From positions 1 to 64,000 of the IMG/VR virus record IMGVR_UViG_3300042519_004024: 64,000 nt of DNA, one strand, 5' to 3'. The notes below the pieces were generated by a model. The model searched no databases, was not told the DNA's origin, and saw only the letters and a list, made by a program, of their open reading frames with translations. The position numbers were made by a program, and so were the translations under genes. Of the stretch, positions 464 to 63,748 are shown one piece after another (within the stretch, counting starts at the first letter, position 1; each line of letters starts with the position of its first letter).

Positions 464-889
464 TTAATTAAATTTAAATCTTTTTTTCTTTTTAATATTA
501 TATGCAAAACGTGTATACCCAAAAGAAACCTCAGAATCCTTAGAATCATCGTAGTTGTAGTCAATACAATCACATTTTACACCCAAATAATCATATACAT
601 AATCAACCATAACTTCAGAAAATATTTTACGTCTAAAGTGGGGAATATATTTTATTAAATCTTCAACAAAATCACTGCTCAATGACAAATCATTTTTACA
701 ACCAGGACTTTTACCTGATTTTTTTCCATAAAAAATTGTCATTATATCACTCCCATTAGAATCATTAATGTCAACCCATTGCTTATTATTACGATCAGAC
801 TCACCAAATGAAAGTTTACCACCTGTGATGGTATCAAGTAAAGTATAAACAAGAAGTTTATATTGTTTTTTTGTGATAATGATTTTCAT
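464..889 (-). CDS. leader-bearing protein (MKIIITxxQY class), unknown function
   Basis: N-terminus MKIIITKKQYKLL; TATTTAT 5 nt upstream (895-901). Confidence 0.8.
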   Translation of the reverse strand: MKIIITKKQYKLLVYTLLDTITGGKLSFGESDRNNKQWVDINDSNGSDIMTIFYGKKSGKSPGCKNDLSLSSDFVEDLIKYIPHFRRKIFSEVMVDYVYDYLGVKCDCIDYNYDDSKDSEVSFGYTRFAYNIKKKKRFKFN

Positions 890-907
890 ATAAGATAAAT
901 ATTACCC

Positions 908-1354
908 CTATAAATAAATTTCACCGTATTTGCGATACATTCCTGAATCTTTATACATTGAAATTTTTTCTGAATATAAATCAGGAAATAGATTAATAAG
1001 TCCTTTTATTAAATCAATATTATAGACGTTATATAATGCATACGCATCTTCACCAAATCTATGTTTAAGATAATCATCAAACACAACTGCACCGACAAAC
1101 CCTGATTTTCTAATAAGTGTTAAACCACGATCCATTAAAAGAATATCACCACCCCTTCTTTCTAAATGTAAATCATCATAATGACTAATAAGATATGAAA
1201 CTATATTTTCTTTATTATTTCCGATGATATCAAGCAAGTTTCCAACCCCACCAACAAGTTCGGCGGTTTCATTCCACCCATCTTGTTCAATTCTATCAAG
1301 AAGTGTGTTATCTAAAGTTTCTTCCTTTAATATTTTTTTAATTAAATTTTTCAT
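908..1354 (-). CDS. leader-bearing protein (MKxLIKKILKEE class) with 'G..T..LVGG..NL' module
   Basis: MKNLIKKILKEE; TATTTAT at 1368-1374. Confidence 0.8.
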   Translation of the reverse strand: MKNLIKKILKEETLDNTLLDRIEQDGWNETAELVGGVGNLLDIIGNNKENIVSYLISHYDDLHLERRGGDILLMDRGLTLIRKSGFVGAVVFDDYLKHRFGEDAYALYNVYNIDLIKGLINLFPDLYSEKISMYKDSGMYRKYGEIYL

Positions 1355-1384
1355 ATAGTCTACTTTAATAAATATATCAAAATA

Positions 1385-1410
1385 AAAAACCCCACTTGAT
1401 AGGGTGGGGG
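1385..1410 (-). terminator. intrinsic terminator
   Basis: CCCCAC/GTGGGG stem followed by a T-run on the minus strand, downstream of 1420..1671. Confidence 0.75.
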
Positions 1411-1419
1411 ATGTATAAT

Positions 1420-1671
1420 TTAAATTTTAGAATCAATTTGTTGAATAACGTCTTTTAGTTTACGAACAAGTCTTCGAATGTTATCCACCTCGTCACCCAT
1501 TTTTTTATAATCTCCTTTTCTTTGTAATGCACCATAGTCATCCATAGATGCTGTTAATCTTCGTGTCACACTTCTTAGTTCATCTTTAACACCTTCTAAA
1601 GACGGGGTATTCTCATTTAACACTTTTTTTACAATTCTTGTAACGTCGTTTTCTGTTATTCTAGTTCTCAT
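1420..1671 (-). CDS. leader-bearing small coiled-coil protein (LTE..RIVK class)
   Basis: MRTRITENDVTRIVKKVLNE; TATTTAT 5 nt upstream. Confidence 0.8.
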   Translation of the reverse strand: MRTRITENDVTRIVKKVLNENTPSLEGVKDELRSVTRRLTASMDDYGALQRKGDYKKMGDEVDNIRRLVRKLKDVIQQIDSKI

Positions 1672-1688
1672 AGTTTATAAATATACGT

Positions 1689-2087
1689 TTATATATAAAT
1701 TTTACCAATAGAGTTTATTTCAATCCCGTGACGATCAAACAACCAATCTTTAATTACATTTCTTGCTCCGTCCTTATCAAGTTTAAATCCAAAACGTAAA
1801 AAATCTGAAAGTTCACTATTAACCTCAACTATTTCAATATCTCGTGTAAATTGCAAAAACAATTTATTCTCATGATTACCAAAATAGTCACCATATTTTC
1901 CATTAACCCTTTTTGTCACCAATAAATCCATAAATTGTATGGGATCATTATCAAATGCCAATTGTGCCAAGGTTTCAGGATCACCAACCAAAGGGTACGT
2001 ACTTTCCCAACCATCCAAATTAACCATACGTTTTAAATCAGATTTAATATTTTCTTCTTTTAATATTTTTTTAATTATATGTTTCAT
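1689..2087 (-). CDS. leader-bearing protein, related to 908..1354
   Basis: MKHIIKKILKEE then DGWESTYPLVG, similar to DGWNETAELVGG. Confidence 0.8.
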   Translation of the reverse strand: MKHIIKKILKEENIKSDLKRMVNLDGWESTYPLVGDPETLAQLAFDNDPIQFMDLLVTKRVNGKYGDYFGNHENKLFLQFTRDIEIVEVNSELSDFLRFGFKLDKDGARNVIKDWLFDRHGIEINSIGKIYI

Positions 2088-3403: not shown

Positions 3404-4021
3404 CTAATTCATTTGTTGCAATTTTTCAACAATATAATTAAAAACTTCTTCACCACTTTTCCCATCTTGTACATGTAATTTTGATTGTACAAAAACTCCA
3501 TTGGCTAACCCCCTGTCACCCTCAAATGAATATACCTCACCAAATCCATTATCATCATCACTAATATATAATTCAAAAATTCCATTCATGGTTTCTTTAA
3601 CACTAATAAAAACACCGTTCTCATTTGTCTTTTTGTGAAATAGTTCTTCTTGTTCTTTAATAACACGTTTAAAAATTTCCATTTCATTTAATTTGTTATA
3701 TTCTGTATTTTCTAATTCTAACATAGATTCTTCATAACAATCAGAAATTTTTTCATAATCATCTGATGATATTAATTTTTTTCTCAAGTATCTACTTGCG
3801 GTATTCATGTAATCATCCAGTATTTGAATAATTTTTTCTTTGGTTATCATTCCACTTGGAAAATCGGCATGTACAAGGTATTCCATATTTCTACACAAAT
3901 CATAAGGTATCAACTCATTTTCCGAATCAAATTCTTCGTCATCAGAAAATCTCATCTCACTAATGGTTCGTTTAACAATACGAGTTAAATCAGATTCTGT
4001 AAGTCTTATTATTCTTTTCAT
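3404..4021 (-). CDS. leader-bearing two-module protein
   Basis: MKRIIRLTESDLTRIVKRTISE; internal leader-like LNE..FKRVIKEQ. Confidence 0.8.
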   Translation of the reverse strand: MKRIIRLTESDLTRIVKRTISEMRFSDDEEFDSENELIPYDLCRNMEYLVHADFPSGMITKEKIIQILDDYMNTASRYLRKKLISSDDYEKISDCYEESMLELENTEYNKLNEMEIFKRVIKEQEELFHKKTNENGVFISVKETMNGIFELYISDDDNGFGEVYSFEGDRGLANGVFVQSKLHVQDGKSGEEVFNYIVEKLQQMN

Positions 4022-4983: not shown

Positions 4984-5316
4984 TTATACAGGGTTTACAT
5001 CTAATGTCCAAACAGCAGTATACGTATAATCTTTCATTGGAAAAAACATATCCATTATAAAATCAATCTCTCCTACTAATTCTGAAAAATCACTTGTTGT
5101 TACAATATCATCTTCATCAGAAATATAAATTGTAATTTTAATTTCTGGAGTTGGGATTAAATTTGAATTAAACCAAGTACCCATTTCAAAATCAACGTCT
5201 TTAAACCAATCTACATCAGAAAAGTATTCTATAATAAAGTTCTTTAATACTTTAATTACTTTACGAAACTCTGTCTCGGTTTCTTCTTTGAGTATACGTT
5301 TAATAAGATGTTTCAT
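4984..5316 (-). CDS. leader-bearing protein
   Basis: MKHLIKRILKEE; TATTTAT 6 nt upstream. Confidence 0.8.
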   Translation of the reverse strand: MKHLIKRILKEETETEFRKVIKVLKNFIIEYFSDVDWFKDVDFEMGTWFNSNLIPTPEIKITIYISDEDDIVTTSDFSELVGEIDFIMDMFFPMKDYTYTAVWTLDVNPV

Positions 5317-5339
5317 ATAAGAATAAATATAAGGGGAAA

Positions 5340-5375: not shown

Positions 5376-5792
5376 TCAATTGTTTTTTATATTTTTTTCC
5401 ATCCATATAAAGACCGTTTCAGTCAATGCGGAGGATAAATCACTAACATCAATATTTCTTCCATCAAGACTCAAAAAGGAATCAATATGTTCATTGTAAA
5501 TTGATGCATCCATGTTAATGTATTTTCCGTATTTTTGAATAAACTCATTTTGATAATCTGAAATCATTTTTGGTAAATTCATGTTTTTAATACAATTAGC
5601 AAACTCATTTTCAATATCCAAATTCAAGTCCCAATATAAATCATTAGCATACTCATCGGCCTCAACATAAGACTCAATAAATGATTCCTCATCTTCAAAT
5701 CCAAAACCTTCCCAATGGTTTTCATTTTCTTTAACCACCCGTTTAACAATACGTGTTAAATCTGATTCTGTAAGTTTTATAGTTCTTTTCAT
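5376..5792 (-). CDS. leader-bearing acidic protein
   Basis: start moved to MKRTIKLTESDLTRIVKRVVKE; TATTTAT at 5810-5816. Confidence 0.8.
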   Translation of the reverse strand: MKRTIKLTESDLTRIVKRVVKENENHWEGFGFEDEESFIESYVEADEYANDLYWDLNLDIENEFANCIKNMNLPKMISDYQNEFIQKYGKYINMDASIYNEHIDSFLSLDGRNIDVSDLSSALTETVFIWMEKNIKNN

Positions 5793-14075: not shown

Positions 14076-14534
14076 TTATATAATTATTAAATCCCAAGCT
14101 TTACACCCATACTTATCGTTTATTAAATTTAAAAGACTTTCTTTCCAATTCATTTGTGGACCAAAGTAGTTTTCAATATCTTCGGCAAAGTCCTGATAAA
14201 ATACAATTACATTAAAACGTGGATCTTTAACATCAGGGAAATCATAACAAGGTTCAGGTAATTCATCTCTTAATTCTTTAGGGTAATCCCCATCATCATC
14301 GTATTTAGTATCATCAACCAATTTAAATATATAATCTTCATAATGATGTGTCGGTAAAACAAACCCGATAGCATATGGATCACAACATACCCCCATACCA
14401 CAGTTATAGTTTGCCCAATCGTAGTACATATCATCAAACCCATCAAACAACATATTAAGTAGGTTGTGTAGTACGGGTTTAATGTTTGTTTCTTCCCTTA
14501 ATACTTTTTTTATGTGTTCTTTTTTACTTCTCAT
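14076..14534 (-). CDS. protein with degenerate leader
   Basis: MRSKKEHIKKVLREE; start overlaps the 3' end of 14524..14826. Confidence 0.7.
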   Translation of the reverse strand: MRSKKEHIKKVLREETNIKPVLHNLLNMLFDGFDDMYYDWANYNCGMGVCCDPYAIGFVLPTHHYEDYIFKLVDDTKYDDDGDYPKELRDELPEPCYDFPDVKDPRFNVIVFYQDFAEDIENYFGPQMNWKESLLNLINDKYGCKAWDLIII

Positions 14535-14826
14535 CACAATTTGTGTTTGTTATAATAGCAAATAAGGATACAGGTATATATGCTTTTAAAGAAACTTCCA
14601 ATTTTTCATTTAAATAATTACCTGAATCCCCATTATATAGTACAAGTATTATATATGTATTTTCCACATACACAGCAACTACATCACATACATTTTCCTC
14701 ACCAAGATAACTTATTGTGAGTTCCTCCAAAAGATCAGAAAATTTACCTTTATTTACAGTTTCTTTTTTAAACTTCTTTATGGTTTCTTCCCTTAATACT
14801 TTTATTATGTGTTCTTGTAGGTTCAT
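14524..14826 (-). CDS. leader-bearing single-module protein (VCD..YIP..C module)
   Basis: MNLQEHIIKVLREE; body resembles the repeats in 17367..19274. Confidence 0.8.
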   Translation of the reverse strand: MNLQEHIIKVLREETIKKFKKETVNKGKFSDLLEELTISYLGEENVCDVVAVYVENTYIILVLYNGDSGNYLNEKLEVSLKAYIPVSLFAIITNTNCDEK

Positions 14827-15422
14827 TGCTGTAATTGGTTTTTAACCGTATTATAAAAATATTCACTAACTTTTTTTGGTGAGTCAATATTTTTTCCTTT
14901 CATGTCTCTTTTATAATGACTAATCATCATTGATATTTGTTGTAATGAAATATTTTTGTACATTTGTGGTGGTGTAAATGAACCAATTAGTCCCATCTTT
15001 TGAAGTTGTCTGATTTTCCTTGCCGCGAATTCATCTGCAACTTCCTCTGTATTTTTCATAAACTCAGCGGCATGTCTTTCTGAAACATCACCCAAATAAC
15101 AACGATACATAAGTTCTTCACCATACTTTTTAAATTGATATTGGTGCGCAACTTCGTGAAGTATAACAAACAACAAAAATGGTAATGGTCTATTAAGTAC
15201 TGTTGAATTAATTAAAACCCCAGTTTCTAATGCGATACCTAATGCTGGTACACTAAAACTTGAGAAGTTTATTCTTTTACAGTTTGATTCTTCAATAAAC
15301 TTTTTTACGAATTCTTTTAGTTCATCTGACATATCATGTGTATTTGATAATTCATCTAAGAATACATCAATACCTTCTGTCTCTTCCTTTAATATTCTTC
15401 TTATATGTTCTTGTAAATTCAT
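14823..15422 (-). CDS. leader-fused HExxH zinc metallopeptidase (ImmA/IrrE-like)
   Basis: FVILHEVAHQY and EEVADEFA. Confidence 0.7.
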   Translation of the reverse strand: MNLQEHIRRILKEETEGIDVFLDELSNTHDMSDELKEFVKKFIEESNCKRINFSSFSVPALGIALETGVLINSTVLNRPLPFLLFVILHEVAHQYQFKKYGEELMYRCYLGDVSERHAAEFMKNTEEVADEFAARKIRQLQKMGLIGSFTPPQMYKNISLQQISMMISHYKRDMKGKNIDSPKKVSEYFYNTVKNQLQQ

Positions 15423-15423
15423 A

Positions 15424-15792
15424 TTAATATGTAACGTGTTCTGCTTCTGTATCAAACTCACTATTAAACCAATCTATAACATACGTTGCTGCGTCTTCAC
15501 CTAAATAATTTTCAAGCGTTTTATATATTTCTGGATTCATATGTAGTTCTCTTTTTGTAGGGGTATACGACGCATATATATGATCGGTTTTATTATCAAA
15601 ACATTCATATAAAAAACTATCCCAAAACAATGGTCGTCTTTCTTTTAAGTGTGCACCATCTTTATTAAAGTTTGGATAAAGTGCCTTTAATATTGAATCA
15701 ACGGCACTAATGTTTTTAATTATTTGGTTACTGTAGTCTTCCTGTGGAAACTCCTCGATTAATACTTTTCTTATATGTTCTTGTAGATTCAT
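15424..15792 (-). CDS. leader-bearing protein
   Basis: MNLQEHIRKVLIEE; TATTTAT 7 nt upstream. Confidence 0.8.
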   Translation of the reverse strand: MNLQEHIRKVLIEEFPQEDYSNQIIKNISAVDSILKALYPNFNKDGAHLKERRPLFWDSFLYECFDNKTDHIYASYTPTKRELHMNPEIYKTLENYLGEDAATYVIDWFNSEFDTEAEHVTY

Positions 15793-15837
15793 ATTATAGA
15801 TAAATATATCCCTAACACAATTATGTTGTTGTGTAGG

Positions 15838-16722: not shown

Positions 16723-17361
16723 TTATTGTCCTCTTACTCTTTTCATTTCTTCTGAACGAAGTTTATCTACATATAATTTATCAATATACCCAGGAGTTTC
16801 TTTTTCTTTTTTAATTAAATCGTTTGCTTTCCATAAAGTATTTTTAACAATAAAATCAATCATTTCATCATTTGTAACTCCTTCAGGTTTTGAAACAGGA
16901 GGAACGCAAATTTGAGTTTTTTCTGGATGTACAGAAAATTCATCTACTGTTATATCATTTCTTCCCATTTTATTTTGGATTGTTTCTAAAAATGTGTCTT
17001 CAAACCAATCTTGAATAACATATTTTAAATAGTTTTTTCTTACGGGAATGTCTGAATTTAATTCATCAAATATATCTTTAGGTATTTGTAATTCACCACT
17101 TTCAAAATCTCTTTCTTCCGTTTTTCTTTTATCATCAAAAACATTTTCATCATGGAAGAATAATATAACACTCATTATTTCTTTTCCGTCGTTACACCAT
17201 TCAAAATCATGTCTTGTTTCCCAAGATTTGTCATGATACATTTGCGCACCATCAACATAGTCGTTTAACCACCTATAGATAAGTTTATCCACACTTGGTG
17301 TTGGCTTTGAGTATTTTTTATTTACCTCCTGTAATAATATTTTTTTAATTAAGTTTTTCAT
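16723..17361 (-). CDS. leader-bearing protein
   Basis: MKNLIKKILLQE. Confidence 0.8.
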   Translation of the reverse strand: MKNLIKKILLQEVNKKYSKPTPSVDKLIYRWLNDYVDGAQMYHDKSWETRHDFEWCNDGKEIMSVILFFHDENVFDDKRKTEERDFESGELQIPKDIFDELNSDIPVRKNYLKYVIQDWFEDTFLETIQNKMGRNDITVDEFSVHPEKTQICVPPVSKPEGVTNDEMIDFIVKNTLWKANDLIKKEKETPGYIDKLYVDKLRSEEMKRVRGQ

Positions 17362-17366
17362 ATTAG

Positions 17367-19274
17367 TTAATTATACATTGGTTTCCACCCACAATTAGGT
17401 TTACCATAACTTCCGACATTTAAATTATCGATTGGTAAATAACTTTTTATTGCTTCTTTAACTACCGTTATTTTTTTCCTAATGTAATGGTATTTCCCAT
17501 CATGTGTAAATTTATCATTTAATTCTTCTGTTCCAAAAACTAAATAAACAGAATACATATCATCTTCGTCGTCATACCACATATCAATATCACAAACACC
17601 CTCATCATTTTTGAATGGTTCGACAATATCTTTTAATAATTCTATATAGTTAGTTTTTTCTTTTTGTTCTCTTAGATAAATGTTTTCTTTTCCACAGTCT
17701 TTAACGTATTTTGAATATATTTCAAGTGAAATCCCTGTATAATCCCAAACCGTTTCCCATATATCGTCTAATACGTCGTCATACATTTTTTGAACCGCCT
17801 GTGTTTGTGGCCACATTTTTGTACCATAACCTCCAATAAATGTTACAGTAACTCCTGGGTAATTAATAACATTATCTAAAGATTTATCGTCAACATTTTT
17901 TAATTCAAATCCACATATAACGTGTTCATATTGTGGTAAAACTAAAGTATTTAAAACTGTGGTAATAAGTTCGTTTGTTGATTTCTCTTTGGATTCATTT
18001 ATATCTCTATCGAAATGTATATAGTATTTGAAGTCCATAGGAAATACTTCCAAGTCTTCCATGACTTGTTTCCCAACTCTTTTAATGACAGAGTTAATTC
18101 CTCCACCCAATCTAATCGAGTCTTCAACATTAAAGAATATATTAACAATAACATCATCGTGTGTGTCATCATAATACACAGTAAATTTTTTAACACTTGG
18201 GTATTCGTTTGTGTTTAAATAATCTTCTATTTTTTGAATCAATTTATTAAACTTTCTTTCTTGTTTAGATTCGTCAGATTCATTCATGAACTCAACCTCA
18301 TCCTCACAATTTTTTACATACCACGGGGTATAGATATATACCCTTATACCCATAGAACTTAGTGTATTTTCTAAAGATTCTAATTCTTGTTCTATGTCAT
18401 TATCACCAAAATAAGATGCTGTAGTTTTTGATCTTATTTCATATTCCTCATCTTCAGGATTGTATTCTACCCATATATCACAAAGTCCGTCCCAACTGAC
18501 TAAAGATAATAATGTGTTTATAACTTTTAGATTCTTTTCTATTTCTGTATCTTTGTTTTCTTTAATTGTTTCCTTACATCTTGTACTATCATATGAAACA
18601 AACGCCATTTCTATTATTGGTAAATATGTTTCTAGTGTATTTTTCATTTCTGTTCGTTTCTCACTGAATACATCATATCCAGGATATCTTCCTTTTTTGT
18701 AATATAAAACAATTTGTAAAGCATCTTCACCTGCATTTAAAAAAAACTCCGTTCTATATCCGCACAAGTCATCTTCATTTACTATACCATAAACAATACT
18801 GTCTATAACATCTTGGTACTGTTTAAACTCCTCTTCTTTTGGGTGCGGTTTTATTCCTTCTACAATATATTCATCACCTTTTCCTGAACCTTCATAAATC
18901 AATTTTATTGCGTCTCTTGGTATGTTTTCAAACGTTACAATGTGTTTTGACCTCGATTCAAAATGTCTATCTTTATACCACTTAACATTTGGTATTTTTG
19001 TTGTATCAATTTCCCATACATCATCGTCATATGTTGAATCGAACCAAGCTCTTTTGTTTGATGAGTTGGTTGCAAATATCGCGGGTTTACATTTTGTTCC
19101 ATATCCAACATATATTCTATAACATTCTCCATCTTTAACCTTTAATCCTTGTTCTTCAATTTTATTTCTAAACATAGGATTTGATTGATGAAATACTTTT
19201 TCATTTGGAATTATTTCTTTTCCTGCCGGTGAATAAGTTTCTTCTCTTAATATATGTCTAATTAGTTCTTTCAT
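17367..19274 (-). CDS. leader-bearing multi-module protein: ADP-ribosyltransferase-like module plus five ~100-aa modules
   Basis: VFHQS..I.EQGL..AIFAT..VWEIDT..ENIPRDAIK; linkers IVE, IKE, MNE, INE, LRE. Confidence 0.7.
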   Translation of the reverse strand: MKELIRHILREETYSPAGKEIIPNEKVFHQSNPMFRNKIEEQGLKVKDGECYRIYVGYGTKCKPAIFATNSSNKRAWFDSTYDDDVWEIDTTKIPNVKWYKDRHFESRSKHIVTFENIPRDAIKLIYEGSGKGDEYIVEGIKPHPKEEEFKQYQDVIDSIVYGIVNEDDLCGYRTEFFLNAGEDALQIVLYYKKGRYPGYDVFSEKRTEMKNTLETYLPIIEMAFVSYDSTRCKETIKENKDTEIEKNLKVINTLLSLVSWDGLCDIWVEYNPEDEEYEIRSKTTASYFGDNDIEQELESLENTLSSMGIRVYIYTPWYVKNCEDEVEFMNESDESKQERKFNKLIQKIEDYLNTNEYPSVKKFTVYYDDTHDDVIVNIFFNVEDSIRLGGGINSVIKRVGKQVMEDLEVFPMDFKYYIHFDRDINESKEKSTNELITTVLNTLVLPQYEHVICGFELKNVDDKSLDNVINYPGVTVTFIGGYGTKMWPQTQAVQKMYDDVLDDIWETVWDYTGISLEIYSKYVKDCGKENIYLREQKEKTNYIELLKDIVEPFKNDEGVCDIDMWYDDEDDMYSVYLVFGTEELNDKFTHDGKYHYIRKKITVVKEAIKSYLPIDNLNVGSYGKPNCGWKPMYN

Positions 19275-19286: not shown

Positions 19287-20657
19287 TTATACTGTTGTAG
19301 TGGTTGGTTTAGCACAGAATGGTATTTCAAATGGTCCTTTTGGATCACCAATAACATCATAAATTGTTTCACCTTTTGAATTTTTAACTAAGACTCTTAC
19401 GGATTCTTCATGCGCTTTAGGATGACTAGGAGTGCTTTCTAAAATCAAAAATTTATCATTATTTGCAACTGCCTTATCATATATCGCTTTAGCCTTCTCA
19501 TCATCAATTGTAAAGACATTATATCTATAATTCCCTGCAGGAAAACAAGCGGTATTTCTGTCTTTACTTGTTTTAAGTGTTTGGGCGTTTTTAGTAGTTT
19601 CACAACATTCGTGTGTCCTATTCCATTTAAGACTTGTTAACTGTTCTTTATCAGGTAAAACTTGTATATCCATAGTACCAATTTTTCCAGGGGCATTTTT
19701 ATCTTGAACTGAGTTACCTTTGGCATCTTTTACAGTTAAATAAAAATCATTACCCGTATTGTCGTTTTCTTGCCCCGCACTAGCATTGTTAACACTTGCG
19801 TACAATTTACCATCATCTCTGACTATTGGCTCACCATTTAATGTTAATTTAAATCTACCTCTATTACAACAGTGAGCGGCTTTTGGTGTTGCTTCAACAA
19901 CTTCGTCATAGTTAAACTCAACCGTTAATCCTTTAATACAAGCCAAATCAGGATTTCTTTCTCCTTTATACTCACATATTGTCCCGTTGAATAGGACTAT
20001 TTGTCCTGGATTAGGATAACTTGCGGTATCTCTATTTTCGTCTATCCTTCCACCCGTATCAACTATATGAGACTCTATTACTGGCGTATCTATAAACACA
20101 ATTCTGTTTTTTGTTAAAAGGGGTTTCATTGATTTCCATAAGTTATTTGCTCTGTCTGCAGCATATTTAAGATCATCATCAAAAAATACTTGGTATTCTG
20201 GATAATTTAAATCATTTATTCCCGCACCTGATAACACGGTATTATAGGAAGTTTTATCGTATGTTTTTACCACATAATTATTATCCATAGTAGGTAAAAC
20301 TGCTCTACCACCAGTAGATGAATATTGTACATATTTATTATTTCTATCACTTCTCACCCTATTTGATGCACACCCAATTAATGTTACTTTACTAATACCT
20401 AAAAATGTTCCTAATTGCCATTTACTATATAAATCAGGTAAATTTGTATTAACATATTCTAAAATACCATTTATAAATTCTTGAGCTCTTTCATTAGTGG
20501 CTGCCTGAGCGGCACTAAACTCTTTTGAGTAATCTTTAAGATTTAAACACGTTCCCTCAACTGTTGATGTTGCGTCTTTTTCCTCACTAAGAATAATTCT
20601 CTTAATGTTCATTAAATCTTGGATTCTAAATATTTCTTCTTTTAATAAATTTTTCAT
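19287..20657 (-). CDS. leader-bearing large protein, possible OmpA-C-like region
   Basis: MKNLLKEEIFRIQDLM..ILSEE; KVTLIGCASN and AADRANNL. Confidence 0.7.
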   Translation of the reverse strand: MKNLLKEEIFRIQDLMNIKRIILSEEKDATSTVEGTCLNLKDYSKEFSAAQAATNERAQEFINGILEYVNTNLPDLYSKWQLGTFLGISKVTLIGCASNRVRSDRNNKYVQYSSTGGRAVLPTMDNNYVVKTYDKTSYNTVLSGAGINDLNYPEYQVFFDDDLKYAADRANNLWKSMKPLLTKNRIVFIDTPVIESHIVDTGGRIDENRDTASYPNPGQIVLFNGTICEYKGERNPDLACIKGLTVEFNYDEVVEATPKAAHCCNRGRFKLTLNGEPIVRDDGKLYASVNNASAGQENDNTGNDFYLTVKDAKGNSVQDKNAPGKIGTMDIQVLPDKEQLTSLKWNRTHECCETTKNAQTLKTSKDRNTACFPAGNYRYNVFTIDDEKAKAIYDKAVANNDKFLILESTPSHPKAHEESVRVLVKNSKGETIYDVIGDPKGPFEIPFCAKPTTTTV

Positions 20658-24005: not shown

Positions 24006-24830
24006 TTAAGCCGTTTGTGCTCCTGATGGTGGTGGTGTTGGTGCTCCTGATAAAGGTGCTGGTTGTGTTGGCGCCGCTGCGGGTGCAGGTGTTGTGGCAC
24101 ATGAAGTTAATCCAGCGGCTTTCATTTGATCTGCAGGTATTACTTCACAACAAGGTTTACCATTAAGAGTGTCTTGGTATTGTTTTAATTGTTCAGGTTT
24201 CATTGTTGCCTTGAACTTAGTTAAATTTTTAAACCAAGTGTTACATTGTTGTTCTTGTTCTTTAGTTGCTCTTTTTTGTTGTCTTGCGTCTTGTCTATCG
24301 TCTCTTTTTTGTTGTCTATCCGCCTTGTTATCGGCTCTTTGTTGTTGTCTTGCGGCTTGGTTAGCATCTTGTCTTTGTTGTCTTAAATCTTGTCTTGATG
24401 CTAATTGTGGTGTTGTTGAACCTGATGCTAGTCCTTGTAATTGTGTTGCTCCTGATGATGTTGTACTCAAACTACTTGCAACTTCAGTAGCGGATTTAGG
24501 TTTTAATTCTAAATTTGGTTGTGTTACTTGTGTAGATTTATCAGGTTGAGCAACATTCAATATTTTATCTTGAATTGCTTTTACACCATCAGGTTTAGTT
24601 TGTTCAATCCATTTAGGTTGTCCGCCATTAGATGTGTCGCCTTTTTTAGCATAAAAAACTTTACCACCTTCACCTTTATATTGGTAAGGATCACCTGCGG
24701 CTCCTTGAACTACTTGTCCGTTTAATGCTTCTTCATGTATGAAATTTTTTTGTATTTCAAACATTGTTTTATGCATATTTAATATCCTACTTTTTTCTGA
24801 TTCCGTAATTAAAAGATTTCTTCTATTCAT
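24006..24830 (-). CDS. leader-bearing protein with Q/R/D-rich repeats and P/A-rich tail
   Basis: LLITESEKSRILNMH; RQQRQD-type repeats; TATTTAT at 24844-24850. Confidence 0.8.
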   Translation of the reverse strand: MNRRNLLITESEKSRILNMHKTMFEIQKNFIHEEALNGQVVQGAAGDPYQYKGEGGKVFYAKKGDTSNGGQPKWIEQTKPDGVKAIQDKILNVAQPDKSTQVTQPNLELKPKSATEVASSLSTTSSGATQLQGLASGSTTPQLASRQDLRQQRQDANQAARQQQRADNKADRQQKRDDRQDARQQKRATKEQEQQCNTWFKNLTKFKATMKPEQLKQYQDTLNGKPCCEVIPADQMKAAGLTSCATTPAPAAAPTQPAPLSGAPTPPPSGAQTA

Positions 24831-24868
24831 AATATTTTTTATTATAAATATATATTAAAAAGAAAAAA

Positions 24869-26486: not shown

Positions 26487-26860
26487 GCATCAATTGTTTT
26501 GATATCGTAGTTAAAATTATCTTTAAACCATTTTTTAAATACAGGTTTCCATAATTCACCAAATTGATTTAATAACTCAATTTTATTGTAGTCTTCAATA
26601 AACAACACAGGACTTTCCATTAAAATATAATCATCCATTTTTTCATAACTTTGTTGGTATAAAATAAATTCCATTGTCCCGTGACTAAAGTCCCCACTAT
26701 AAAAATAAATATCGTCTGATATAACATACTCACGGTTATCAAAATCATATATTTCCTGTTCACCATAAGATATGTCACTAACATCGTACAAATCATTTAT
26801 ATAATCATAAATGTGTTGTTCCATTTCATTAAGTTGGTTCTCTGTAATTATTATTTTCAT
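26483..26860 (-). CDS. leader-bearing protein
   Basis: start moved to MKIIITENQLNE (TAATG overlap). Confidence 0.8.
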   Translation of the reverse strand: MKIIITENQLNEMEQHIYDYINDLYDVSDISYGEQEIYDFDNREYVISDDIYFYSGDFSHGTMEFILYQQSYEKMDDYILMESPVLFIEDYNKIELLNQFGELWKPVFKKWFKDNFNYDIKTIDA

Positions 26861-47910: not shown

Positions 47911-48282
47911 ATGGAACATCTGATTAGAAAAATATTATTGCAGGAAACTTTTGGTAGAGATCGTTGGGATGCTGAGTATTCGGATGAATATCCAAAATAT
48001 AAAAATATGTTAACAACAGCAATTAAAATGGATATAACGGCATCAGGTAAAAGTGAAACTTCAATCATGCTTGGTGACTCAAATGGAAATATTTTAATTC
48101 ATTTTAAAATTGGTAGTAAAACTCTTTATTATGACTATAATTGGTCAGAAGACATTGAAAAGTTAATGCCTTGGCATATTTATGTTAGGCATTTTAAATA
48201 CGCATTGGCTGATTATTTTATCAGTATATTTCCTGACGTATTAATAAAAGATGTGACAGGAGCACATATTACATCATACTAA
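47911..48282 (+). CDS. leader-bearing protein
   Basis: MEHLIRKILLQE; TATTTAT 9 nt upstream. Confidence 0.8.
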   Translation: MEHLIRKILLQETFGRDRWDAEYSDEYPKYKNMLTTAIKMDITASGKSETSIMLGDSNGNILIHFKIGSKTLYYDYNWSEDIEKLMPWHIYVRHFKYALADYFISIFPDVLIKDVTGAHITSY

Positions 48283-48284
48283 CT

Positions 48285-49865
48285 ATGAAAATAATTTTAA
48301 CAGAAGAACAATACAAATACATACTTGTTGAAAGTACTTTAAAAGACACGTTAAATGATTTAAAAATAAACTCAGGTGTTTTATTTACCTTTGGTACTGG
48401 TATAGGCGCGTTCATTAATCCAGTTGAAAGATTACTTTCAGGTTCAGGATTCTCAATGGATGAGAAAGATATTATATTACTAATCATAACATCATTTGCA
48501 CTTATTATAAAAGACTCTGAGGGGTCAACATTATTAGAAAAAGTTAGAGAAAAGGGTTTAATGCCGGCACTTAAGGGTGTTATAAACTTTGTTACAAACG
48601 TAAAAGATGTTTTAAACGCAATTTCAAAGAATCTGATTGGCGTAACGTATTCTTTATTAGATATATTAGGTTTCACACTTCTTTTAAACCCAACAATGAA
48701 AATCATAGATGAGGTGATTAAAGATAACAATATCGGTTTAGATAATACCGAACGACTCTTGTCAGGAGCAGCATTAGCAACAACCGTTTATTCACTTAAA
48801 AGTGTGTTTGGTAAACTTAAAGATAAGTTTAAAAAAAATGTAAATGAGGATATTGAACCTTCTGATGAAGCAATAAAAAACATTTGTGATTCAGAAAAGT
48901 TTTGTAATGCTCAAGGTAAAATAACATTCGGACAACTAAAGGCGTTAGTTGAAAACGCATCAACAAATAGATTAATACAACATGTTGGTGAGGGTGGATT
49001 TAAGGCAACTCTTAGATTACTTCCTTGGTTTTTACCACAACTGGCAATCGCAGGATTTGTTACCTCATCAATAAGAGCGGTTAATAAAATATTAAGACCA
49101 ACATTAGAGGAAACAGAAAACTACAAAACTTGGTGGGGTAAGGTTATTTTAAAATCGTTTAATCTATCTGAAGGTGAGCTTGGTTTATCGGATCCCTTAT
49201 CAAGAGTATTTTTTATATCGGACGGTTTAATGACGATGTTAAATGATAGATATAAAGTTAAGTTTGCAAAATATATTGCAGAAATTGCAAGTGAAATGCC
49301 TGATGATGAACCTGTTCCTGAATTTTTTGTTGAAAATGAATTAAGACATTGGTTAAACGATAAGTTCTTACTAAATCCACCTTTACAACCAAAATCATTT
49401 AAGGAAGTCCCTAATGCTGACGAATCTTTAAATGAAAACTATGTTAGATTCACAGAAGATAATACGTCAGATTTAATTGAAGACTTAATGTCTATGGGAT
49501 TTGATAGAGAAACTTCAATACATGAATTTAATGAACTAGTTTCAATTTATGAGAACTTACCAAATACTATGGTTTTGTATCGTTTGGTTTTTTCGGACAG
49601 TCAAGAAGAGATAGATACTCAGTACCCAGGTTACCACTATACCAGAAAGAAAAAAGATTTATTAGATAATCATTATTTTCAAAGTTATAGAGACTCAAGT
49701 ACAGGTGAAAACCCATATATTATTAAAGTTAGAATACAAAAACAAATGATTGATTTTTACGAATCAATAAAGAATAACATCCTTTATCCGGGTGAAAAAG
49801 AAATAACATTAAAGGATAAGGGATTTGGCGCTAAAATAGTAGAAATAATGCCGGTTAATATTTAA
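48285..49865 (+). CDS. leader-bearing three-module protein: hydrophobic module, second module, C-terminal ADP-ribosyltransferase-like module
   Basis: MKIILTEEQY; linkers VNE and LNE; VLYR..YIIKVRI..YPGEKEITL (ExE). Confidence 0.65.
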   Translation: MKIILTEEQYKYILVESTLKDTLNDLKINSGVLFTFGTGIGAFINPVERLLSGSGFSMDEKDIILLIITSFALIIKDSEGSTLLEKVREKGLMPALKGVINFVTNVKDVLNAISKNLIGVTYSLLDILGFTLLLNPTMKIIDEVIKDNNIGLDNTERLLSGAALATTVYSLKSVFGKLKDKFKKNVNEDIEPSDEAIKNICDSEKFCNAQGKITFGQLKALVENASTNRLIQHVGEGGFKATLRLLPWFLPQLAIAGFVTSSIRAVNKILRPTLEETENYKTWWGKVILKSFNLSEGELGLSDPLSRVFFISDGLMTMLNDRYKVKFAKYIAEIASEMPDDEPVPEFFVENELRHWLNDKFLLNPPLQPKSFKEVPNADESLNENYVRFTEDNTSDLIEDLMSMGFDRETSIHEFNELVSIYENLPNTMVLYRLVFSDSQEEIDTQYPGYHYTRKKKDLLDNHYFQSYRDSSTGENPYIIKVRIQKQMIDFYESIKNNILYPGEKEITLKDKGFGAKIVEIMPVNI

Positions 49866-59623: not shown

Positions 59624-59624
59624 G

Positions 59625-60620: not shown

Positions 60621-60669
60621 ATAACACGTTTAATAGTACAAATATAAAAAAAATAATTTAATCAGACAA

Positions 60670-61596
60670 CTAAGATGGGAGTTTTTTTCCTTTGTGATGT
60701 GTTTTTTCGTTTTCTACTTTAATCTTAATCTTTGGTTCGTGTCCCTTTGGTAGTTTGTTTTTAATTCCTACCATTTCCCCCATGTCATTATCCATTCTAA
60801 CAGTAACTTCTTTTTTGTCAAGATTCAACATTATTTGTCCTGTAGTTTGCATGTTGTACATATTCTTAGTTCTGTATGGATTTAAAAATGGATTCTTATC
60901 GTATTTTTGTTTTAATCTGTCAATTACCTCACTGTCTGTTTTTACATCCTCTAAATGTTTTTTAGCAAAGTCTAATCTCATATGAGATGATTTTTTCTTT
61001 TCACCTTTAGTATAACCAACACTTTTATGGTATATTCCGTGGTTAGTTCTTACAATTACTTTTGTTTCTTTTTTTAATTTTTTAATAATAGGCGAATGTT
61101 TAGATGTCATTTCAATAACATAAACACCATTAGAATCTGAAACAAACGTTTCCCCCTTTAACCCAACATCTTTTTTATCTTTACCACTAAACCCAACAAT
61201 AGATTTTATTACTTGTGGTAATGTTTTTTGTGATAATGCCTTTCTTATTTTTTCACCATCATAAGATTTAATTCTGGTTTCAGTTGCATCGTTATTCCTT
61301 TTCTTTTGTACTTCTTTTCCTTCTTTTTCGTCTTGATTAACAAGTAAGCTAGAATTTACTATACCTATACCATATTCATTCATTCCTTCACTCCAATCAG
61401 TATCAACATCTCTCCAATACACCACTTCAACGCCATCAATAAGTTCGTGAACAATCTCAACTTTTGCTTTATACCCCCTGTCTCTATTTTTTGCAAGAAC
61501 AACACTATCACCAAGCCTAACCGCAGCTATTGTACATTCCTTTATTAACTCAGGTTGGGTTTCTTCTATTAATATTTGTTTAATTAAATTGTTCAT
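60670..61596 (-). CDS. leader-fused Ntn-hydrolase (peptidase C45 / choloylglycine-hydrolase-like)
   Basis: LIKE|CTIAA..LAKNRDR..EGMNEYGIGIVNS..RTNHG. Confidence 0.75.
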   Translation of the reverse strand: MNNLIKQILIEETQPELIKECTIAAVRLGDSVVLAKNRDRGYKAKVEIVHELIDGVEVVYWRDVDTDWSEGMNEYGIGIVNSSLLVNQDEKEGKEVQKKRNNDATETRIKSYDGEKIRKALSQKTLPQVIKSIVGFSGKDKKDVGLKGETFVSDSNGVYVIEMTSKHSPIIKKLKKETKVIVRTNHGIYHKSVGYTKGEKKKSSHMRLDFAKKHLEDVKTDSEVIDRLKQKYDKNPFLNPYRTKNMYNMQTTGQIMLNLDKKEVTVRMDNDMGEMVGIKNKLPKGHEPKIKIKVENEKTHHKGKKLPS

Positions 61597-62252
61597 TTAA
61601 ATTTTTTCACTCTTTCTTTTGTTCTCATTTTATTTGCGTAGTCTAACCAAACTTCTTTAACTTTTTTCCATTCTTTTTTTGGATTTTTAAACTTTCTTTT
61701 GTTTTCGTCAAACCATTCATCCATGGCGTCCTCCAAAGATATTTTTTTTGTTTTAGATCTTTTTATCAGTCCTCTAACATAAGCAGGTATTTCAACATTA
61801 GATGTTAAATATTTAAAATTATAATCTTCATCTTCTTCATCATATTCTTCATCATTTTTTACATACATATCGTCAAAATTTTGTTGCTCAACATGTTCTA
61901 ATTCATGTTCAATAGTTTCTTTTACTTCAGCAACTAAATCATTCATACTTTTAGGGAACTCGTCAGGGTTGTAGGTTATTTCAATTTCTATTTCTTGCAT
62001 ATCACCAGATCCCCTAACAGAAAACGGATCTTCCATTTTTTTATCTTCTATAAAATAACAAAAGAAATCAAAATTAGCATATTCATCACCTTTTTCAAAA
62101 TGAATATTCTGTAATTCAAAATCTTTTTTATTTTTAAACTGATTAATAACAAATCTAGATAAAGCCAATGATAGTTCATCTGTTTTTCTTTCTGTAATAA
62201 TTTTTTTTGAGATTTTTTTTACAATCCCCTCTAATAGTGTTTTTTTGTACAT
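61593..62252 (-). CDS. leader-fused HExxH zincin-like protein
   Basis: KKIITE; TIEHELEHVEQ..EIPAY; TATTTAT 4 nt upstream. Confidence 0.65.
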   Translation of the reverse strand: MYKKTLLEGIVKKISKKIITERKTDELSLALSRFVINQFKNKKDFELQNIHFEKGDEYANFDFFCYFIEDKKMEDPFSVRGSGDMQEIEIEITYNPDEFPKSMNDLVAEVKETIEHELEHVEQQNFDDMYVKNDEEYDEEDEDYNFKYLTSNVEIPAYVRGLIKRSKTKKISLEDAMDEWFDENKRKFKNPKKEWKKVKEVWLDYANKMRTKERVKKFK

Positions 62253-62308
62253 ACTAATAAATATCATTTAAAAAAAAAGTATTATATTTGTATCTAAATA
62301 AAATAGAT

Positions 62309-62878
62309 ATGAGATTTTTTGTTGTACTTTTTTTCTTGATTATTAATAATTTTTTACTTTCTCAACAAATTAATAATCAAAATTTTAACTCTTCGGAGAT
62401 GAACCGTGTTTTGTTAAAAACTTTTAACGAATTTCGTAAATCTAAAGGTTTGGATACCCTTATTTATTCTGAAACAGTGTTTGATAGTCTTTCTTACCCA
62501 AACTGTGTTGAGGTTTCTTCTTCTTGTAAATTTTACCATCCGTCGCTTACTAATAGATGGAAAAACAAAACTTTAAGAGAGTTAATTGTAAACGAATCTT
62601 ATAATAAAATTGGTGGTAACGTAATGAGACATTCTTCAGGACTTCCTTGGATGGATACTTGGGAAAATGCCTTTAGATCTTATGGAATCTTTACTAGTTA
62701 TGAAGAAATTGCAAAAATAGCAATTGAAAGTTGGGAAAATTCTCTTGGACATAGTAGAGTTCAAAATATGTCTTTTGAGTCTGGTGGGTTACCGGGGTTA
62801 TTTTCTTGTCATTCGGCTTATGGTAAGAACGGTTACATTTACATATATATAAATTTTGTTACCGTACACAGAAATTAA
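62309..62878 (+). CDS. secreted CAP/SCP-domain protein
   Basis: signal peptide; NEFRKSKGL; WENSLGH; TATATTTG at 62283-62290. Confidence 0.7.
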   Translation: MRFFVVLFFLIINNFLLSQQINNQNFNSSEMNRVLLKTFNEFRKSKGLDTLIYSETVFDSLSYPNCVEVSSSCKFYHPSLTNRWKNKTLRELIVNESYNKIGGNVMRHSSGLPWMDTWENAFRSYGIFTSYEEIAKIAIESWENSLGHSRVQNMSFESGGLPGLFSCHSAYGKNGYIYIYINFVTVHRN

Positions 62879-62881
62879 TTT

Positions 62882-63490
62882 TTACTGTTGTAGATGTGTC
62901 ATAAGAACACCACCTAACGCAGTTGCATGTACTTGTAAATGGTTAATCGATTCCATATCAAGTCTTGTTTTTCTTTTTGTATAATCTAAACCTAAAGTTC
63001 CAATAAACTTATCATCAATTGTTTTAATTGCAAATAAGTAACCAGACTTACAGTTAGTATCTTCTGCAATATATTTTAAACCATATGTAGCAATTGATTC
63101 ATCCTTGTAATCAGGAATTTCAATAACGTCGTTACTTAGTAATTGATTTATAGATTTTGAAAATAGGTTTACTGGTATGTTATGAAAATTTGTTTGGACT
63201 GATGTGACTCCAGGATGTACCGTTTCATACATTATAGAAAACTTAGCCATTGATTTTCCTGTTGGGTAAAAGTTACCCCCATTGTGGAATTGTGTTATCC
63301 AAACCCTATCAGCATTAAACTCTTCTTTTATGTGTTCTATTTTGTTTGTTACAAGCTCTGAAACCCTTAAAGTTTCTTTAACCATATCAGGTTTTTCCTT
63401 CTTCTCAAGCTTACTCTTTATATAAAGAACTAAGATTGGTCCGATAACTCCCGTTATAAATGCAATAATAATCCCCACGTATTCACTCAT
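62882..63490 (-). CDS. single-TM protein with GAF-like domain; T4 gp t-like holin candidate
   Basis: N-terminal TM; ADRVWITQFHNG, YET, IEIPD, FIGTLGLDY. Confidence 0.55.
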   Translation of the reverse strand: MSEYVGIIIAFITGVIGPILVLYIKSKLEKKEKPDMVKETLRVSELVTNKIEHIKEEFNADRVWITQFHNGGNFYPTGKSMAKFSIMYETVHPGVTSVQTNFHNIPVNLFSKSINQLLSNDVIEIPDYKDESIATYGLKYIAEDTNCKSGYLFAIKTIDDKFIGTLGLDYTKRKTRLDMESINHLQVHATALGGVLMTHLQQ

Positions 63491-63499
63491 AATATTTTT

Positions 63500-63748
63500 T
63501 TAATTTGATCCAGAATAATTTCTTTTATTTTCCATTTTTTCATAATAACCTTCTTTAGAACCTTTCCAATCCCAAGGCAAATTATTTTTCATATTGTATT
63601 CCAACTTATCTTTAGAAATTCCTTTTAATTTCATCATAAGTTTTTTATAAAAAGATTCATCATTATTATCCTCCTTATCTTTTTCTAATATAACTTTTTT
63701 GACAATTCTTGTCAAATCAGTTTCGGTTAATCTTGTAAATCTTTTCAT
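63500..63748 (-). CDS. leader-bearing small protein
   Basis: MKRFTRLTETDLTRIVKKVILE; TATTTAT 8 nt upstream. Confidence 0.8.
   Translation of the reverse strand: MKRFTRLTETDLTRIVKKVILEKDKEDNNDESFYKKLMMKLKGISKDKLEYNMKNNLPWDWKGSKEGYYEKMENKRNYSGSN

What the first reader, a model, noticed from the sequence alone, without database searches (positions are those of the whole stretch)
464..63748. About 40 unrelated proteins share short N-terminal leaders with [I/L/V]-x-E: candidate capsid-targeting, protease-processed cargo system
Seen in the sequence: roughly six leader classes. MK(I/V)I(I/L)TExQ occurs about 10 times (e.g. 25911-29247, 45539, 48285). MKxxI(R/K)LTExDLxRIVKxxxxE occurs 5 times (1420, 2091, 3404, 5376, 63500). 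MKxLI(K/R)xIL(K/R)E occurs about 10 times. MNLQEHIxKVLxEE occurs about 5 times, MNLQExIxRxxSMM..E about 7 times, and LxTESEKxRI about twice. The leaders are amphipathic, charged and have no hydrophobic core, and the sequences after them are unrelated. Established: T4 internal proteins carry a roughly 10-residue capsid-targeting sequence, T4 gp21 cuts after (I/L)-x-E, phiKZ/SPN3US head proteases cut after (S/A/G)-x-E, and T4 injects processed cargo such as Alt. Inference: these leaders are packaging tags removed during head maturation, which would give this phage a very large, modular injected arsenal. I do not know of this leader family being described, but cannot check the literature.
Basis: partly seen in the sequence, partly recalled or inferred. 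Interest (0 to 1): 0.92.

Follow-up and report, generated by a model that had tools for sequence, protein, structure and literature searches.

The report
Capsid-address tags on many phage proteins
A roughly 287-kb T4-like phage of freshwater Bacteroidota puts short, interchangeable N-terminal tags ending in a head-protease-type cut site on at least 60 unrelated late proteins, most likely to load them into the capsid for delivery into the next host.

Summary
38 ORFs in the window, and at least 61 in about 169 kb of the same genome, begin with related 12-22-residue leaders on unrelated bodies. Conservation is at the protein level: synonymous codons vary. The leaders sit at true N-termini and stop abruptly at a hydrophobic-hydrophobic-x-Glu motif. 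They are virus-only and very common in uncultured freshwater phages: one class alone marks 8,082 protein clusters.

The window's own genome encodes a T4-type head module with a gp21-family (Peptidase_S77) protease. The predicted maturation site of its major capsid protein, L-I-N-E|A, aligns exactly with T4 gp23 E65|A66. It has the same form as the leader ends.

Leader genes carry the promoter motif that precedes the head genes, not the host-type motif of presumed early genes. Orthologous bodies carry different leader classes, so the classes are interchangeable.

Best explanation (confidence about 0.6): these are capsid-targeting propeptides, analogous to the T4 CTS and cut off by the prohead protease, which load a very large variable cargo. 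Packaging, cleavage and injection are inferred; no proteomics exists.

This is a new leader family at unprecedented scale, so a new variant of a known kind.

The parts
464..889 (-). Class A leader ORF (degenerate: Lys replaces the Glu at position 7), 141 aa
   Evidence: P2 motif 5 nt upstream
908..1354 (-). Class C leader ORF, 148 aa
   Evidence: preceded by a terminator-like hairpin and a P2 motif at 1368-1376
1420..1671 (-). Class B leader ORF (shortened variant), 83 aa
   Evidence: P2 at 1677-1685
1689..2087 (-). Class C leader ORF, 132 aa
2091..2564 (-). Class B leader ORF, 157 aa; true start is an internal Met of the longest ORF
3404..4021 (-). Class B leader ORF, 205 aa; query for the protein searches
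   Evidence: first row of alignment A1
4984..5316 (-). Class C leader ORF, 110 aa
   Evidence: P2 at 5323-5331 after a G/C hairpin
5376..5792 (-). Class B leader ORF, 138 aa (start moved to the motif Met)
   Evidence: identical copy in IMG/VR loci L020 and L066
9348..13288 (-). Array of six head-to-tail MNLQE-type leader ORFs, starting at 9788, 10451, 11252, 12022, 12797 and 13288 on the minus strand. Bodies include a P-loop kinase-like domain and DUF2237.
   Evidence: The DUF2237 profile starts at residue 20, so the leader is an N-terminal addition.
14076..15792 (-). Array of four leader ORFs of the MNLQEHIxKVLxEE type; the one at 14076-14534 is a variant without MNLQE
16723..19274 (-). Two class C leader ORFs (212 aa and 635 aa)
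19287..20657 (-). Leader ORF of the loose xxEIxRIQxLM type, 456 aa
20654..22070 (-). Three class C leader ORFs (161, 180 and 129 aa)
24006..24830 (-). Leader ORF of the (L/I)ITE-x-EK-x-RI type, 274 aa
   Evidence: The same leader type sits on PG_binding_1 and head-module proteins elsewhere in the genome.
25911..29247 (-). Array of six class A leader ORFs. The last (28393-29247) is a cell-wall hydrolase with PG_binding_1 plus Hydrolase_2.
31171..31833 (-). Class A leader ORF with Gln in place of Glu at position 7, 220 aa
32963..33835 (-). Leader ORF of the xxNINRIKELM type, 290 aa
45539..46792 (-). Class A variant (Met-Ala-Lys start), 417 aa
   Evidence: P2 at 46797-46805
47911..49865 (+). Plus-strand pair: class C ORF (47911-48282) and class A ORF (48285-49865, 526 aa)
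60670..61596 (-). Class C leader ORF, 308 aa
63500..63748 (-). Class B leader ORF, 82 aa, just downstream of the holin gene that lies past the window end
15800..15808 (-). Example of the late-promoter-like P2 motif (TATATTTAT), 7 nt before a leader ORF
   Evidence: The same motif precedes 74/80 protease genes of relatives.
24844..24852 (-). P2 motif, 13 nt before the leader ORF at 24006-24830
63757..63765 (-). P2 motif after a terminator-like hairpin, 8 nt before the class B ORF

Best explanation
The window is the first 64 kb of a roughly 287-kb T4-like myophage of freshwater Bacteroidota. Its short N-terminal leaders are capsid-targeting propeptides.

The proposed mechanism has four steps.
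1. A leader-bearing protein is made late, from the same promoter type as the head genes.
2. The beta-strand and amphipathic-helix part of the leader binds a component of the assembling prohead core, so the protein is enclosed when the shell forms.
3. The gp21-family (Peptidase_S77) prohead protease cuts after the invariant Glu of the terminal hydrophobic-hydrophobic-x-Glu motif. This is the same kind of site at which it matures the major capsid protein.
4. The freed cargo stays in the head with the DNA and enters the next host at infection.

SHOWN here:
- The leaders exist, are N-terminal, are conserved as protein, end sharply at h-h-x-E, and are modular and interchangeable.
- They are virus-only and very widespread.
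- The genome has the protease, and the capsid protein has a matching site at the position of the T4 cleavage site.
- Leader genes share the head-gene promoter motif.

INFERRED:
- Binding to the prohead core.
- Actual cleavage.
- Presence in virions.
- Ejection.
For: - Counts: 38 leader ORFs in the window and at least 61 in about 169 kb of the genome. The bodies are unrelated.
- Class B logo from 114 non-redundant IMG/VR proteins: the positions not enforced by the search pattern (MKKIIR, R-V-I, and Glu in 113/114) are conserved. Conservation then collapses within one or two residues.
- Codons vary synonymously at every position, including AGA/CGT/CGA switches.
- Position: 130/132 class B matches lie 5-7 residues after a Met. 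For classes A, C and D, at least 88% have no upstream in-frame Met.
- Spread: 8,082 clusters at 50% identity carry the class B leader, nearly all at residues 1-28. There is only one hit in 185,579 bacterial and archaeal genomes.
- The same genome holds TerL, Portal_T4, Peptidase_S77, an acidic scaffold-like protein and a Gp23-family capsid protein. The protease is 32% identical to T4 gp21 and keeps the ELNHP and GVSSRG motifs.
- Capsid-protein alignment: an invariant E|A column puts L-I-N-E60|A61 opposite T4 L-T-E65|A66. T4 removes a 65-residue propeptide there (PMC9958956).
- Leader ends have the same form: V-I-(N/K)-E, I-L-K-E-E and V-L-R-E-E, and a junction K-I-V-N-E|A-P-V in one ortholog family.
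- Orthologous bodies carry B, C, D1 or A-like leaders, joined by a variable 3-8-residue acidic linker.
- The P2 motif precedes 74/80 protease genes and 72/74 scaffold-like genes, and the head genes of this genome. In the window the counts are: leader genes P2 15 / P1 2; other genes P2 4 / P1 9; p=0.002.
- Some cargo bodies bind or cut peptidoglycan (Hydrolase_2, PG_binding_1, LysM) yet have no signal peptide. That fits delivery from the virion.
- AF2 places the leader as a separate helix, joined by a loop to a confident body.
- Precedent: the T4 10-residue CTS and gp21 cleavage after Glu (PMC9026906, PMC5694885).
Against: - There is no proteomic or experimental evidence of any kind.
- No cultured phage carries the leaders. 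The nearest cultured relative has the protease but no leaders, so the protease does not by itself imply the system.
- The leaders show no detectable similarity to T4 CTS peptides.
- Cargo bodies are mostly acidic (median pI 5.1), unlike the basic T4 internal proteins.
- Sixty or more different cargo proteins per genome is far beyond any known case and may strain capacity or copy number.
- Some database proteins carry second or third internal copies of the motif, which a strictly N-terminal tag does not require.
- In classes A and D2 the terminal Glu is less regular.
- The late function of P2 is inferred from its position only.
- The capsid cleavage site is predicted by alignment only.
Confidence: 0.6

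Rival explanations
1. Uncleaved docking tag. The leader is a small strand-plus-helix module that recruits late proteins to a common partner other than the prohead interior, and is never removed. The partner could be a phage chaperone (the genome encodes ClpB-like and DnaJ proteins), the inner membrane, an assembly site, or the outside of the virion.
For: - The motif forms a capping box plus an amphipathic helix.
- Internal copies exist in fusion proteins, so it can work away from the N-terminus.
- Phage-encoded chaperones are present.
- Late expression fits any assembly-linked role.
Against: - It does not explain why conservation stops at an invariant Glu preceded by two hydrophobic residues, the same form as the capsid protein's predicted maturation site.
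- It does not explain the variable acidic linker that follows.
- It does not explain the junction E|A in an ortholog family.
Confidence: 0.18
2. Expression or recombination cassette. The late promoter together with the first 12-22 codons forms a conserved 5' module. It gives efficient translation of near-leaderless, Shine-Dalgarno-free mRNAs, or it serves as a homology patch for shuffling accessory genes. The peptide itself has no role.
For: - P2 ends only 4-17 nt before the ATG, so the mRNAs would have very short 5' UTRs.
- Leader codons are A/T-rich.
- Leader genes are mobile, moron-like units, often bounded by terminators.
Against: - Synonymous codons vary freely, including six-fold switches, while the amino acids stay fixed.
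- Head genes with the same promoter have no leader.
- Internal copies lie far from any start codon.
- Different leader classes sit on one body.
Confidence: 0.06
3. Export signal. The leaders route late proteins across the inner membrane, or through holin lesions, to the periplasm or cell surface.
For: Several bodies are peptidoglycan-binding or peptidoglycan-cleaving (Hydrolase_2, PG_binding_1, LysM) and lack a Sec signal.
Against: - The leaders are charged and have no hydrophobic core.
- Other bodies are cytoplasmic-type enzymes: a P-loop kinase, DUF2237 and a SprT-like domain.
- Genes in this genome with classic signal peptides use the host-type promoter and have no leader.
- The canonical endolysin and holin have no leader.
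Confidence: 0.05
4. Pro-sequence without delivery. The leaders are cut by the head protease, but the proteins are transient assembly factors or core components that are degraded or expelled during maturation. They are not an injected arsenal.
For: - In T4 most core proteins (gp22, gp67, gp68) are cut and lost (PMC9026906).
- Some leader genes lie inside or next to head modules.
Against: - The bodies are enzymes and diverse folds that vary from phage to phage. That pattern fits accessory conflict genes rather than assembly parts.
- They are not conserved in the nearest relative with the same head module.
Confidence: 0.1

Closest known systems
T4 capsid targeting sequence (CTS) of internal proteins IPI/IPII/IPIII and Alt, and the variable IP loci of T-even phages
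   Same: - A short N-terminal peptide on otherwise unrelated proteins.
- It ends in (L/I)-x-E. In T4 IPII, IPIII and gp24 the motif ends at residue 10.
- A gp21-family protease is present in the same genome.
- The head module is T4-type: portal gp20 and capsid gp23.
- The cargo varies between related phages (PMC9026906).
   Different: - No detectable sequence similarity (leader HMMs score 1 bit or less).
- Length is 12-22 residues rather than 10.
- Several interchangeable classes are built from two sub-motifs.
- At least 60 genes per genome rather than about 4, and thousands of cargo families.
- The bodies are mostly acidic.
- Occasional internal copies.
- Function is untested here.
Propeptides of head and ejection proteins of giant phages phiKZ, 201phi2-1 and SPN3US
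   Same: - Jumbo phages with a gp21-related protease that cuts after Glu.
- Many internal head proteins.
- Paralogs with conserved N-termini, for example the identical first 15 residues of SPN3US gp53 and gp54 (PMC5694885).
   Different: - Those propeptides are mostly over 100 residues long.
- Their cleavage motif is (S/A/G)-x-E.
- They involve about 8 processed proteins.
- There is no short shared tag across dozens of unrelated proteins.
Encapsulin cargo-loading peptides
   Same: A short peptide addresses diverse enzymes into an HK97-fold shell.
   Different: They are usually C-terminal, are not cleaved, belong to cellular nanocompartments, and deliver nothing to another cell. This comparison rests on my own knowledge and was not tested here.
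Phage P1 Dar anti-restriction proteins packaged in the head
   Same: Accessory anti-defence proteins are loaded into the capsid and injected. The P1 paper PMC9024508 came up in the literature search on capsid targeting sequences but was not read.
   Different: That system uses hierarchical protein-protein loading, has no shared short tag, and has a different head type. This rests on my own knowledge.

Membership tests
T4-type CTS / gp21-processed head cargo | The genome encodes a gp21-family (Peptidase_S77) prohead protease | tested here: met
   L223:13576-14283 lies on the same JGI contig that overlaps the window. It matches PF03420 and is 32% identical to T4 gp21, E=1e-21.
T4-type CTS / gp21-processed head cargo | T4-type head module (gp20 portal, gp23 capsid protein, core or scaffold gene between protease and capsid gene) | tested here: met
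   Portal_T4, a Gp23-family protein and an acidic 480-aa protein lie in T4 gene order.
T4-type CTS / gp21-processed head cargo | A short propeptide at the extreme N-terminus of otherwise unrelated proteins | tested here: met
T4-type CTS / gp21-processed head cargo | The propeptide ends in the protease's cleavage motif (hydrophobic-x-Glu) | tested here: met
   The Glu is invariant and P3/P4 are hydrophobic. The form is the same as the predicted capsid-protein site, which aligns to T4 E65|A66. This is sequence evidence only.
T4-type CTS / gp21-processed head cargo | Expressed late, together with the head proteins | tested here: inconclusive
   A shared upstream motif P2 is found. There are no transcript data.
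T4-type CTS / gp21-processed head cargo | The tag is homologous in sequence to the T4 CTS | tested here: not met
   Leader HMMs score 1 bit or less on the N-termini of T4 IPI, IPII, IPIII, gp24, gp67, gp68, gp21 and gp22. Peptides this short may simply retain no signal.
T4-type CTS / gp21-processed head cargo | The protein is found in the mature virion with the propeptide removed, and enters the host | not testable with these tools
   This needs virion proteomics. No cultured member is known.
phiKZ-like giant-phage head propeptides | Long (over 100 aa) propeptides and an (S/A/G)-x-E motif | tested here: not met
   The leaders are 12-22 aa, with Ile, Leu or Val at P3.
Sec/Tat/lipoprotein signal peptides | A hydrophobic core of 10 or more residues, or a twin-arginine motif | tested here: not met
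   The leaders are amphipathic and highly charged. True signal peptides occur on other genes of the genome.

The most novel reading that the evidence does not exclude
A large, abundant lineage of freshwater T4-like phages uses a combinatorial peptide 'address code'. The code is a few interchangeable 12-22-residue leaders, each ending in the head protease's site. With it the phages load dozens of different accessory proteins per virion type into the capsid and inject them. The pool would comprise at least 8,000 distinct protein families for one leader class alone. Proteins with internal leader copies would be polyprotein cargo cut into pieces inside the head. If so, the leaders would let injected phage effectors be read directly from metagenomes.
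Probability: 0.45. Interest if true: 0.9.

Novelty: new variant of a known kind. Interest (0 to 1): 0.78.

Why it matters
- If the leaders are capsid-address tags, they give a sequence-only way to list the proteins a phage brings into the cell before any gene is expressed. That class includes anti-defence and takeover factors, and it is almost invisible in uncultured phages.
- The scale would change the view of how much protein a tailed phage can deliver: at least 60 genes in one genome, and thousands of cargo families across lakes.
- The tags are short and modular. Like the T4 CTS, they could be used to load foreign proteins into capsids.
- The promoter pair found here (host-type TAnnTTTG versus TATATTTAT) also gives an early/late map for an abundant but uncultured phage group.

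Tried and rejected
- **GenBank relatives.** Searches of GenBank phages with window DNA, a whole leader protein and two 22-24-aa leaders found nothing.
- **Known families.** Pfam and PHROGs have no family for the leaders. Rfam finds no RNA family in the window. A full-text search for the motif strings found only unrelated papers.
- **Hidden paralogy of the bodies.** Rejected by phmmer.
- **DNA-level conservation.** Rejected by codon tables.
- **The 381-aa class B protein next to the protease in L057/L099 as the scaffold.** Rejected: it is an insertion found in 2 of 80 related head modules.
- **Synteny anchor from the window to the head module.** It failed; only one small gene is shared. I therefore walked the contig with 12 look-ups.
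- **Picking out this genome's protease from protein-database hits by contig length.** This failed.
- **Leaders in the nearest cultured phage (Flavobacterium phage immuto).** None were found, and no homologs of the cargo.
- **Homology to the T4 CTS.** Not detectable.
- **The gene-poor stretch at 5.9-7.85 kb.** No repeats or RNA of note.


Full report
**1. What the window is.**
- The window has 30% G+C, and nearly all genes are on the minus strand.
- It matches nothing in GenBank phages at the DNA level.
- Exact-protein look-ups place it on two abutting contigs of JGI freshwater metagenome 3300042327: Ga0453920_0000010 (157,584 bp) and Ga0453920_0000016 (128,044 bp).
- It is the first 64 kb of IMGVR_UViG_3300042519_004024 (coordinates).
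- The longest contig carrying the same proteins is 286,821 bp, so the genome is about 287 kb.
- Several lines point to a Bacteroidota host:
  - There is no Shine-Dalgarno sequence, and a TAnnTTTG promoter-like motif precedes many genes. That this motif is typical of Bacteroidetes is my own knowledge.
  - CHU_C and T9SS-associated domains occur in structural genes.
  - The only hit in 185,579 prokaryotic genomes is a 3.3-kb contig binned with a Bacteroidetes MAG.
  - The nearest cultured relative by capsid protein is Flavobacterium phage vB_FspM_immuto, at 41.6% identity.

**2.
- After removing the N-terminus the bodies are unrelated.
- Known domains on the bodies are few:
  - a cell-wall hydrolase with a peptidoglycan-binding domain (28393-29247);
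  - DUF2237 (12797-13288), whose profile starts at residue 20, so the leader is an addition;
  - a P-loop kinase-like protein (9789-10451).
- The same detector finds 0 leaders in 141.6 kb of phage immuto, against 36 in the window.
- Walking the contigs shows the system continues well outside the window. At least 61 distinct leader ORFs (about 13.5 thousand residues) lie in about 169 kb.

**3. Anatomy of the leaders.**
Of 132 matches, 130 lie 5-7 codons after a Met.
- In 114 non-redundant proteins, positions that the pattern did not enforce are conserved: M-K-K-I-I-R before the core, R-V-I after it, and Glu in 113/114. Information content then falls from over 3 bits to under 0.5 within two residues.
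At least 88% of those matches have no upstream in-frame Met.
- The classes end as follows:
  - class C ends I-L-(K/R)-E-E at residue 12;
  - the D1 sub-type ends V-L-(R/K)-E-E at residue 14;
  - class A has an invariant hydrophobic residue at 13 and frequent Glu at 15;
  - the D2 sub-type is least regular.
- The classes share two sub-motifs, so they are variants of one design:
  - a short strand plus helix cap (h-T-E-x-D/Q-h, a capping box with a hydrophobic staple);
  - an amphipathic helix ending h-h-x-E.
- AF2 on one family models the leader as a separate helix (residues 3-14, pLDDT about 63). A loop joins it to a confident helical body (pLDDT 80-92).

**4. Protein, not DNA.** Within the window and across IMG/VR every leader position uses several synonymous codons. 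These include Arg AGA/CGT/CGA and Leu TTA/CTA/CTT.

**5. Distribution.**
- A profile of the first 30 residues of 94 class B proteins was searched against 1.84 billion representatives. It finds 8,082 clusters at E up to 0.001 and 699 at 1e-10. Almost all matches start at residue 1.
- All named hits are 'hypothetical protein'.
- Some proteins hold two or three copies, including internal ones.
- The literature search found no description of this family.

**6. The protease test.**
- Near class B genes in IMG/VR I found T4-type head modules: Portal_T4, Peptidase_S77 and Gp23. The protease clade is very abundant, with at least 7,994 database proteins.
- Walking contig Ga0453920_0000016 from the window's left end reaches tail and baseplate genes, then the head module. 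In order it holds TerL, Portal_T4, 242-aa and 149-aa proteins, Peptidase_S77 (235 aa), DUF4494, an acidic 480-aa scaffold-like protein and a Gp23-family capsid protein. It lies about 58 kb from the window.
- The protease is 32% identical to T4 gp21 and keeps the ELNHP and GVSSRG motifs.
- The N-terminal alignment of capsid proteins has an invariant Glu-Ala column. It reads H-L-I-N-E60|A61 here, I-V-S-E|A in immuto and L-T-E65|A66 in T4.
- T4 gp21 removes exactly 65 residues from gp23 (PMC9958956) and cuts glutamyl-alanyl bonds (PMC9026906).
- The leader ends V-I-(N/K)-E, I-L-K-E-E and V-L-R-E-E have the same form. One ortholog family has the junction K-I-V-N-E|A-P-V or K-V-V-K-E|A-P-V.

**7. 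Timing.**
- Two upstream motifs separate the genes.
  - P1 (TAnnTTTG) precedes non-leader genes and genes with signal peptides.
  - P2 ((A/T)ATATTTAT, ending 4-17 nt before the ATG and often after a hairpin plus T-run) precedes leader genes.
- In the window the counts are: leader genes P2 15 / P1 2; other genes P2 4 / P1 9. Fisher p=0.002, and random 45-mers carry P2 at 2.6%.
- P2 precedes the protease, the scaffold-like gene and neighbouring head genes of this genome. In relatives it precedes 74/80 protease genes and 72/74 scaffold-like genes, with P1 at 0/80.
- P2 also precedes 51%, 36% and 24% of IMG/VR class A, C and D genes.
- I infer that P2 is the late promoter and that leader genes are late genes.

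**8. Interchangeability.**
- One body family (conserved YMFFSNLEQ helix bundle) carries B-type, C-type, D1-type or A-like leaders in different phages. A variable 3-8-residue acidic linker sits after the terminal Glu.
- A second family swaps B-type and C-like leaders.
- Leader genes also appear as insertions inside head modules in a few relatives.

**9. Interpretation.**
- The data fit a T4-like capsid-targeting and processing system: late synthesis, docking to the prohead core, removal of the tag by the S77 protease, and storage of the cargo in the head.
- T4 shows that a 10-residue tag is enough, and that T-even phages vary their tagged cargo (PMC9026906, PMC5694885).
- The peptidoglycan-directed cargo without signal peptides fits delivery from the virion.
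- The rivals explain the sharp Glu boundary, the match to the capsid site and the free synonymous variation less well. They are an uncleaved docking tag, a 5' expression or recombination cassette, an export signal, and transient assembly factors.
- Weak points:
  - there is no experiment and no cultured member;
  - the immuto relative has the protease but no leaders;
  - the cargo is acidic;
  - internal copies exist;
  - there is no similarity to the T4 tag;
  - the number of cargo genes is very large.

**10. Verdict.**
- It is a new leader family and a new scale for a known principle.
- Confidence in the full mechanism is about 0.6.

Noticed in passing
L126:1146-12958 (JGI contig Ga0453920_0000010, just right of the window end): A cluster of 24 tRNA genes, interspersed with small genes that carry the host-type promoter motif.
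   Followed up: partly
L001:5375-7954 (about 2-5 kb past the window's right end): The phage encodes a GAF/PAS histidine kinase (707 aa) and a response regulator, next to a GH19 endolysin and a holin. A two-component system is unusual cargo for a phage.
   Followed up: no
window upstream regions, e.g. 37880-37900, 50567-50590, 60621-60640: A host-type TAnnTTTG (Bacteroidetes -7-like) motif precedes non-leader genes, and TATATTTAT precedes leader and head genes. Together they give a candidate early/late promoter pair for this uncultured lineage.
   Followed up: yes
proteins P0259, P0260, P0269, P0273, P0291, P0364: Database proteins carry two or three copies of the class B motif, some of them internal. 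They may be fused cargo genes or polyprotein-like cargo. They were not checked for gene-calling or recoding artefacts.
   Followed up: partly
L223:12810-12998 (minus strand, inside the head module): A ribosomal protein S21-like gene (PF01165) lies between the portal-side core genes and the protease. It is conserved in relatives (L213-L218).
   Followed up: no
window:5900-7850: A gene-poor stretch with G-runs and a local loss of the strong negative GC skew. No Rfam hit and no notable repeats were found.
   Followed up: partly
window:47911-49865: This is the only plus-strand leader genes in the window (a class C gene and then a class A gene, 526 aa). They are inverted relative to all their neighbours. 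The class A body has a hydrophobic segment right after the leader.
   Followed up: no
L221:16766-18805, L129:2734-3726: The phage encodes a ClpB-like AAA+ protein and a full DnaJ. Relatives also carry an Hsp70-like gene (L110). This amounts to a phage-borne chaperone set.
   Followed up: no
window:60180-60620: This 146-aa gene is the only window gene with a homolog next to the head module of relatives, for example L150:11519-11935. There it sits on the opposite strand, downstream of the capsid gene.
   Followed up: partly
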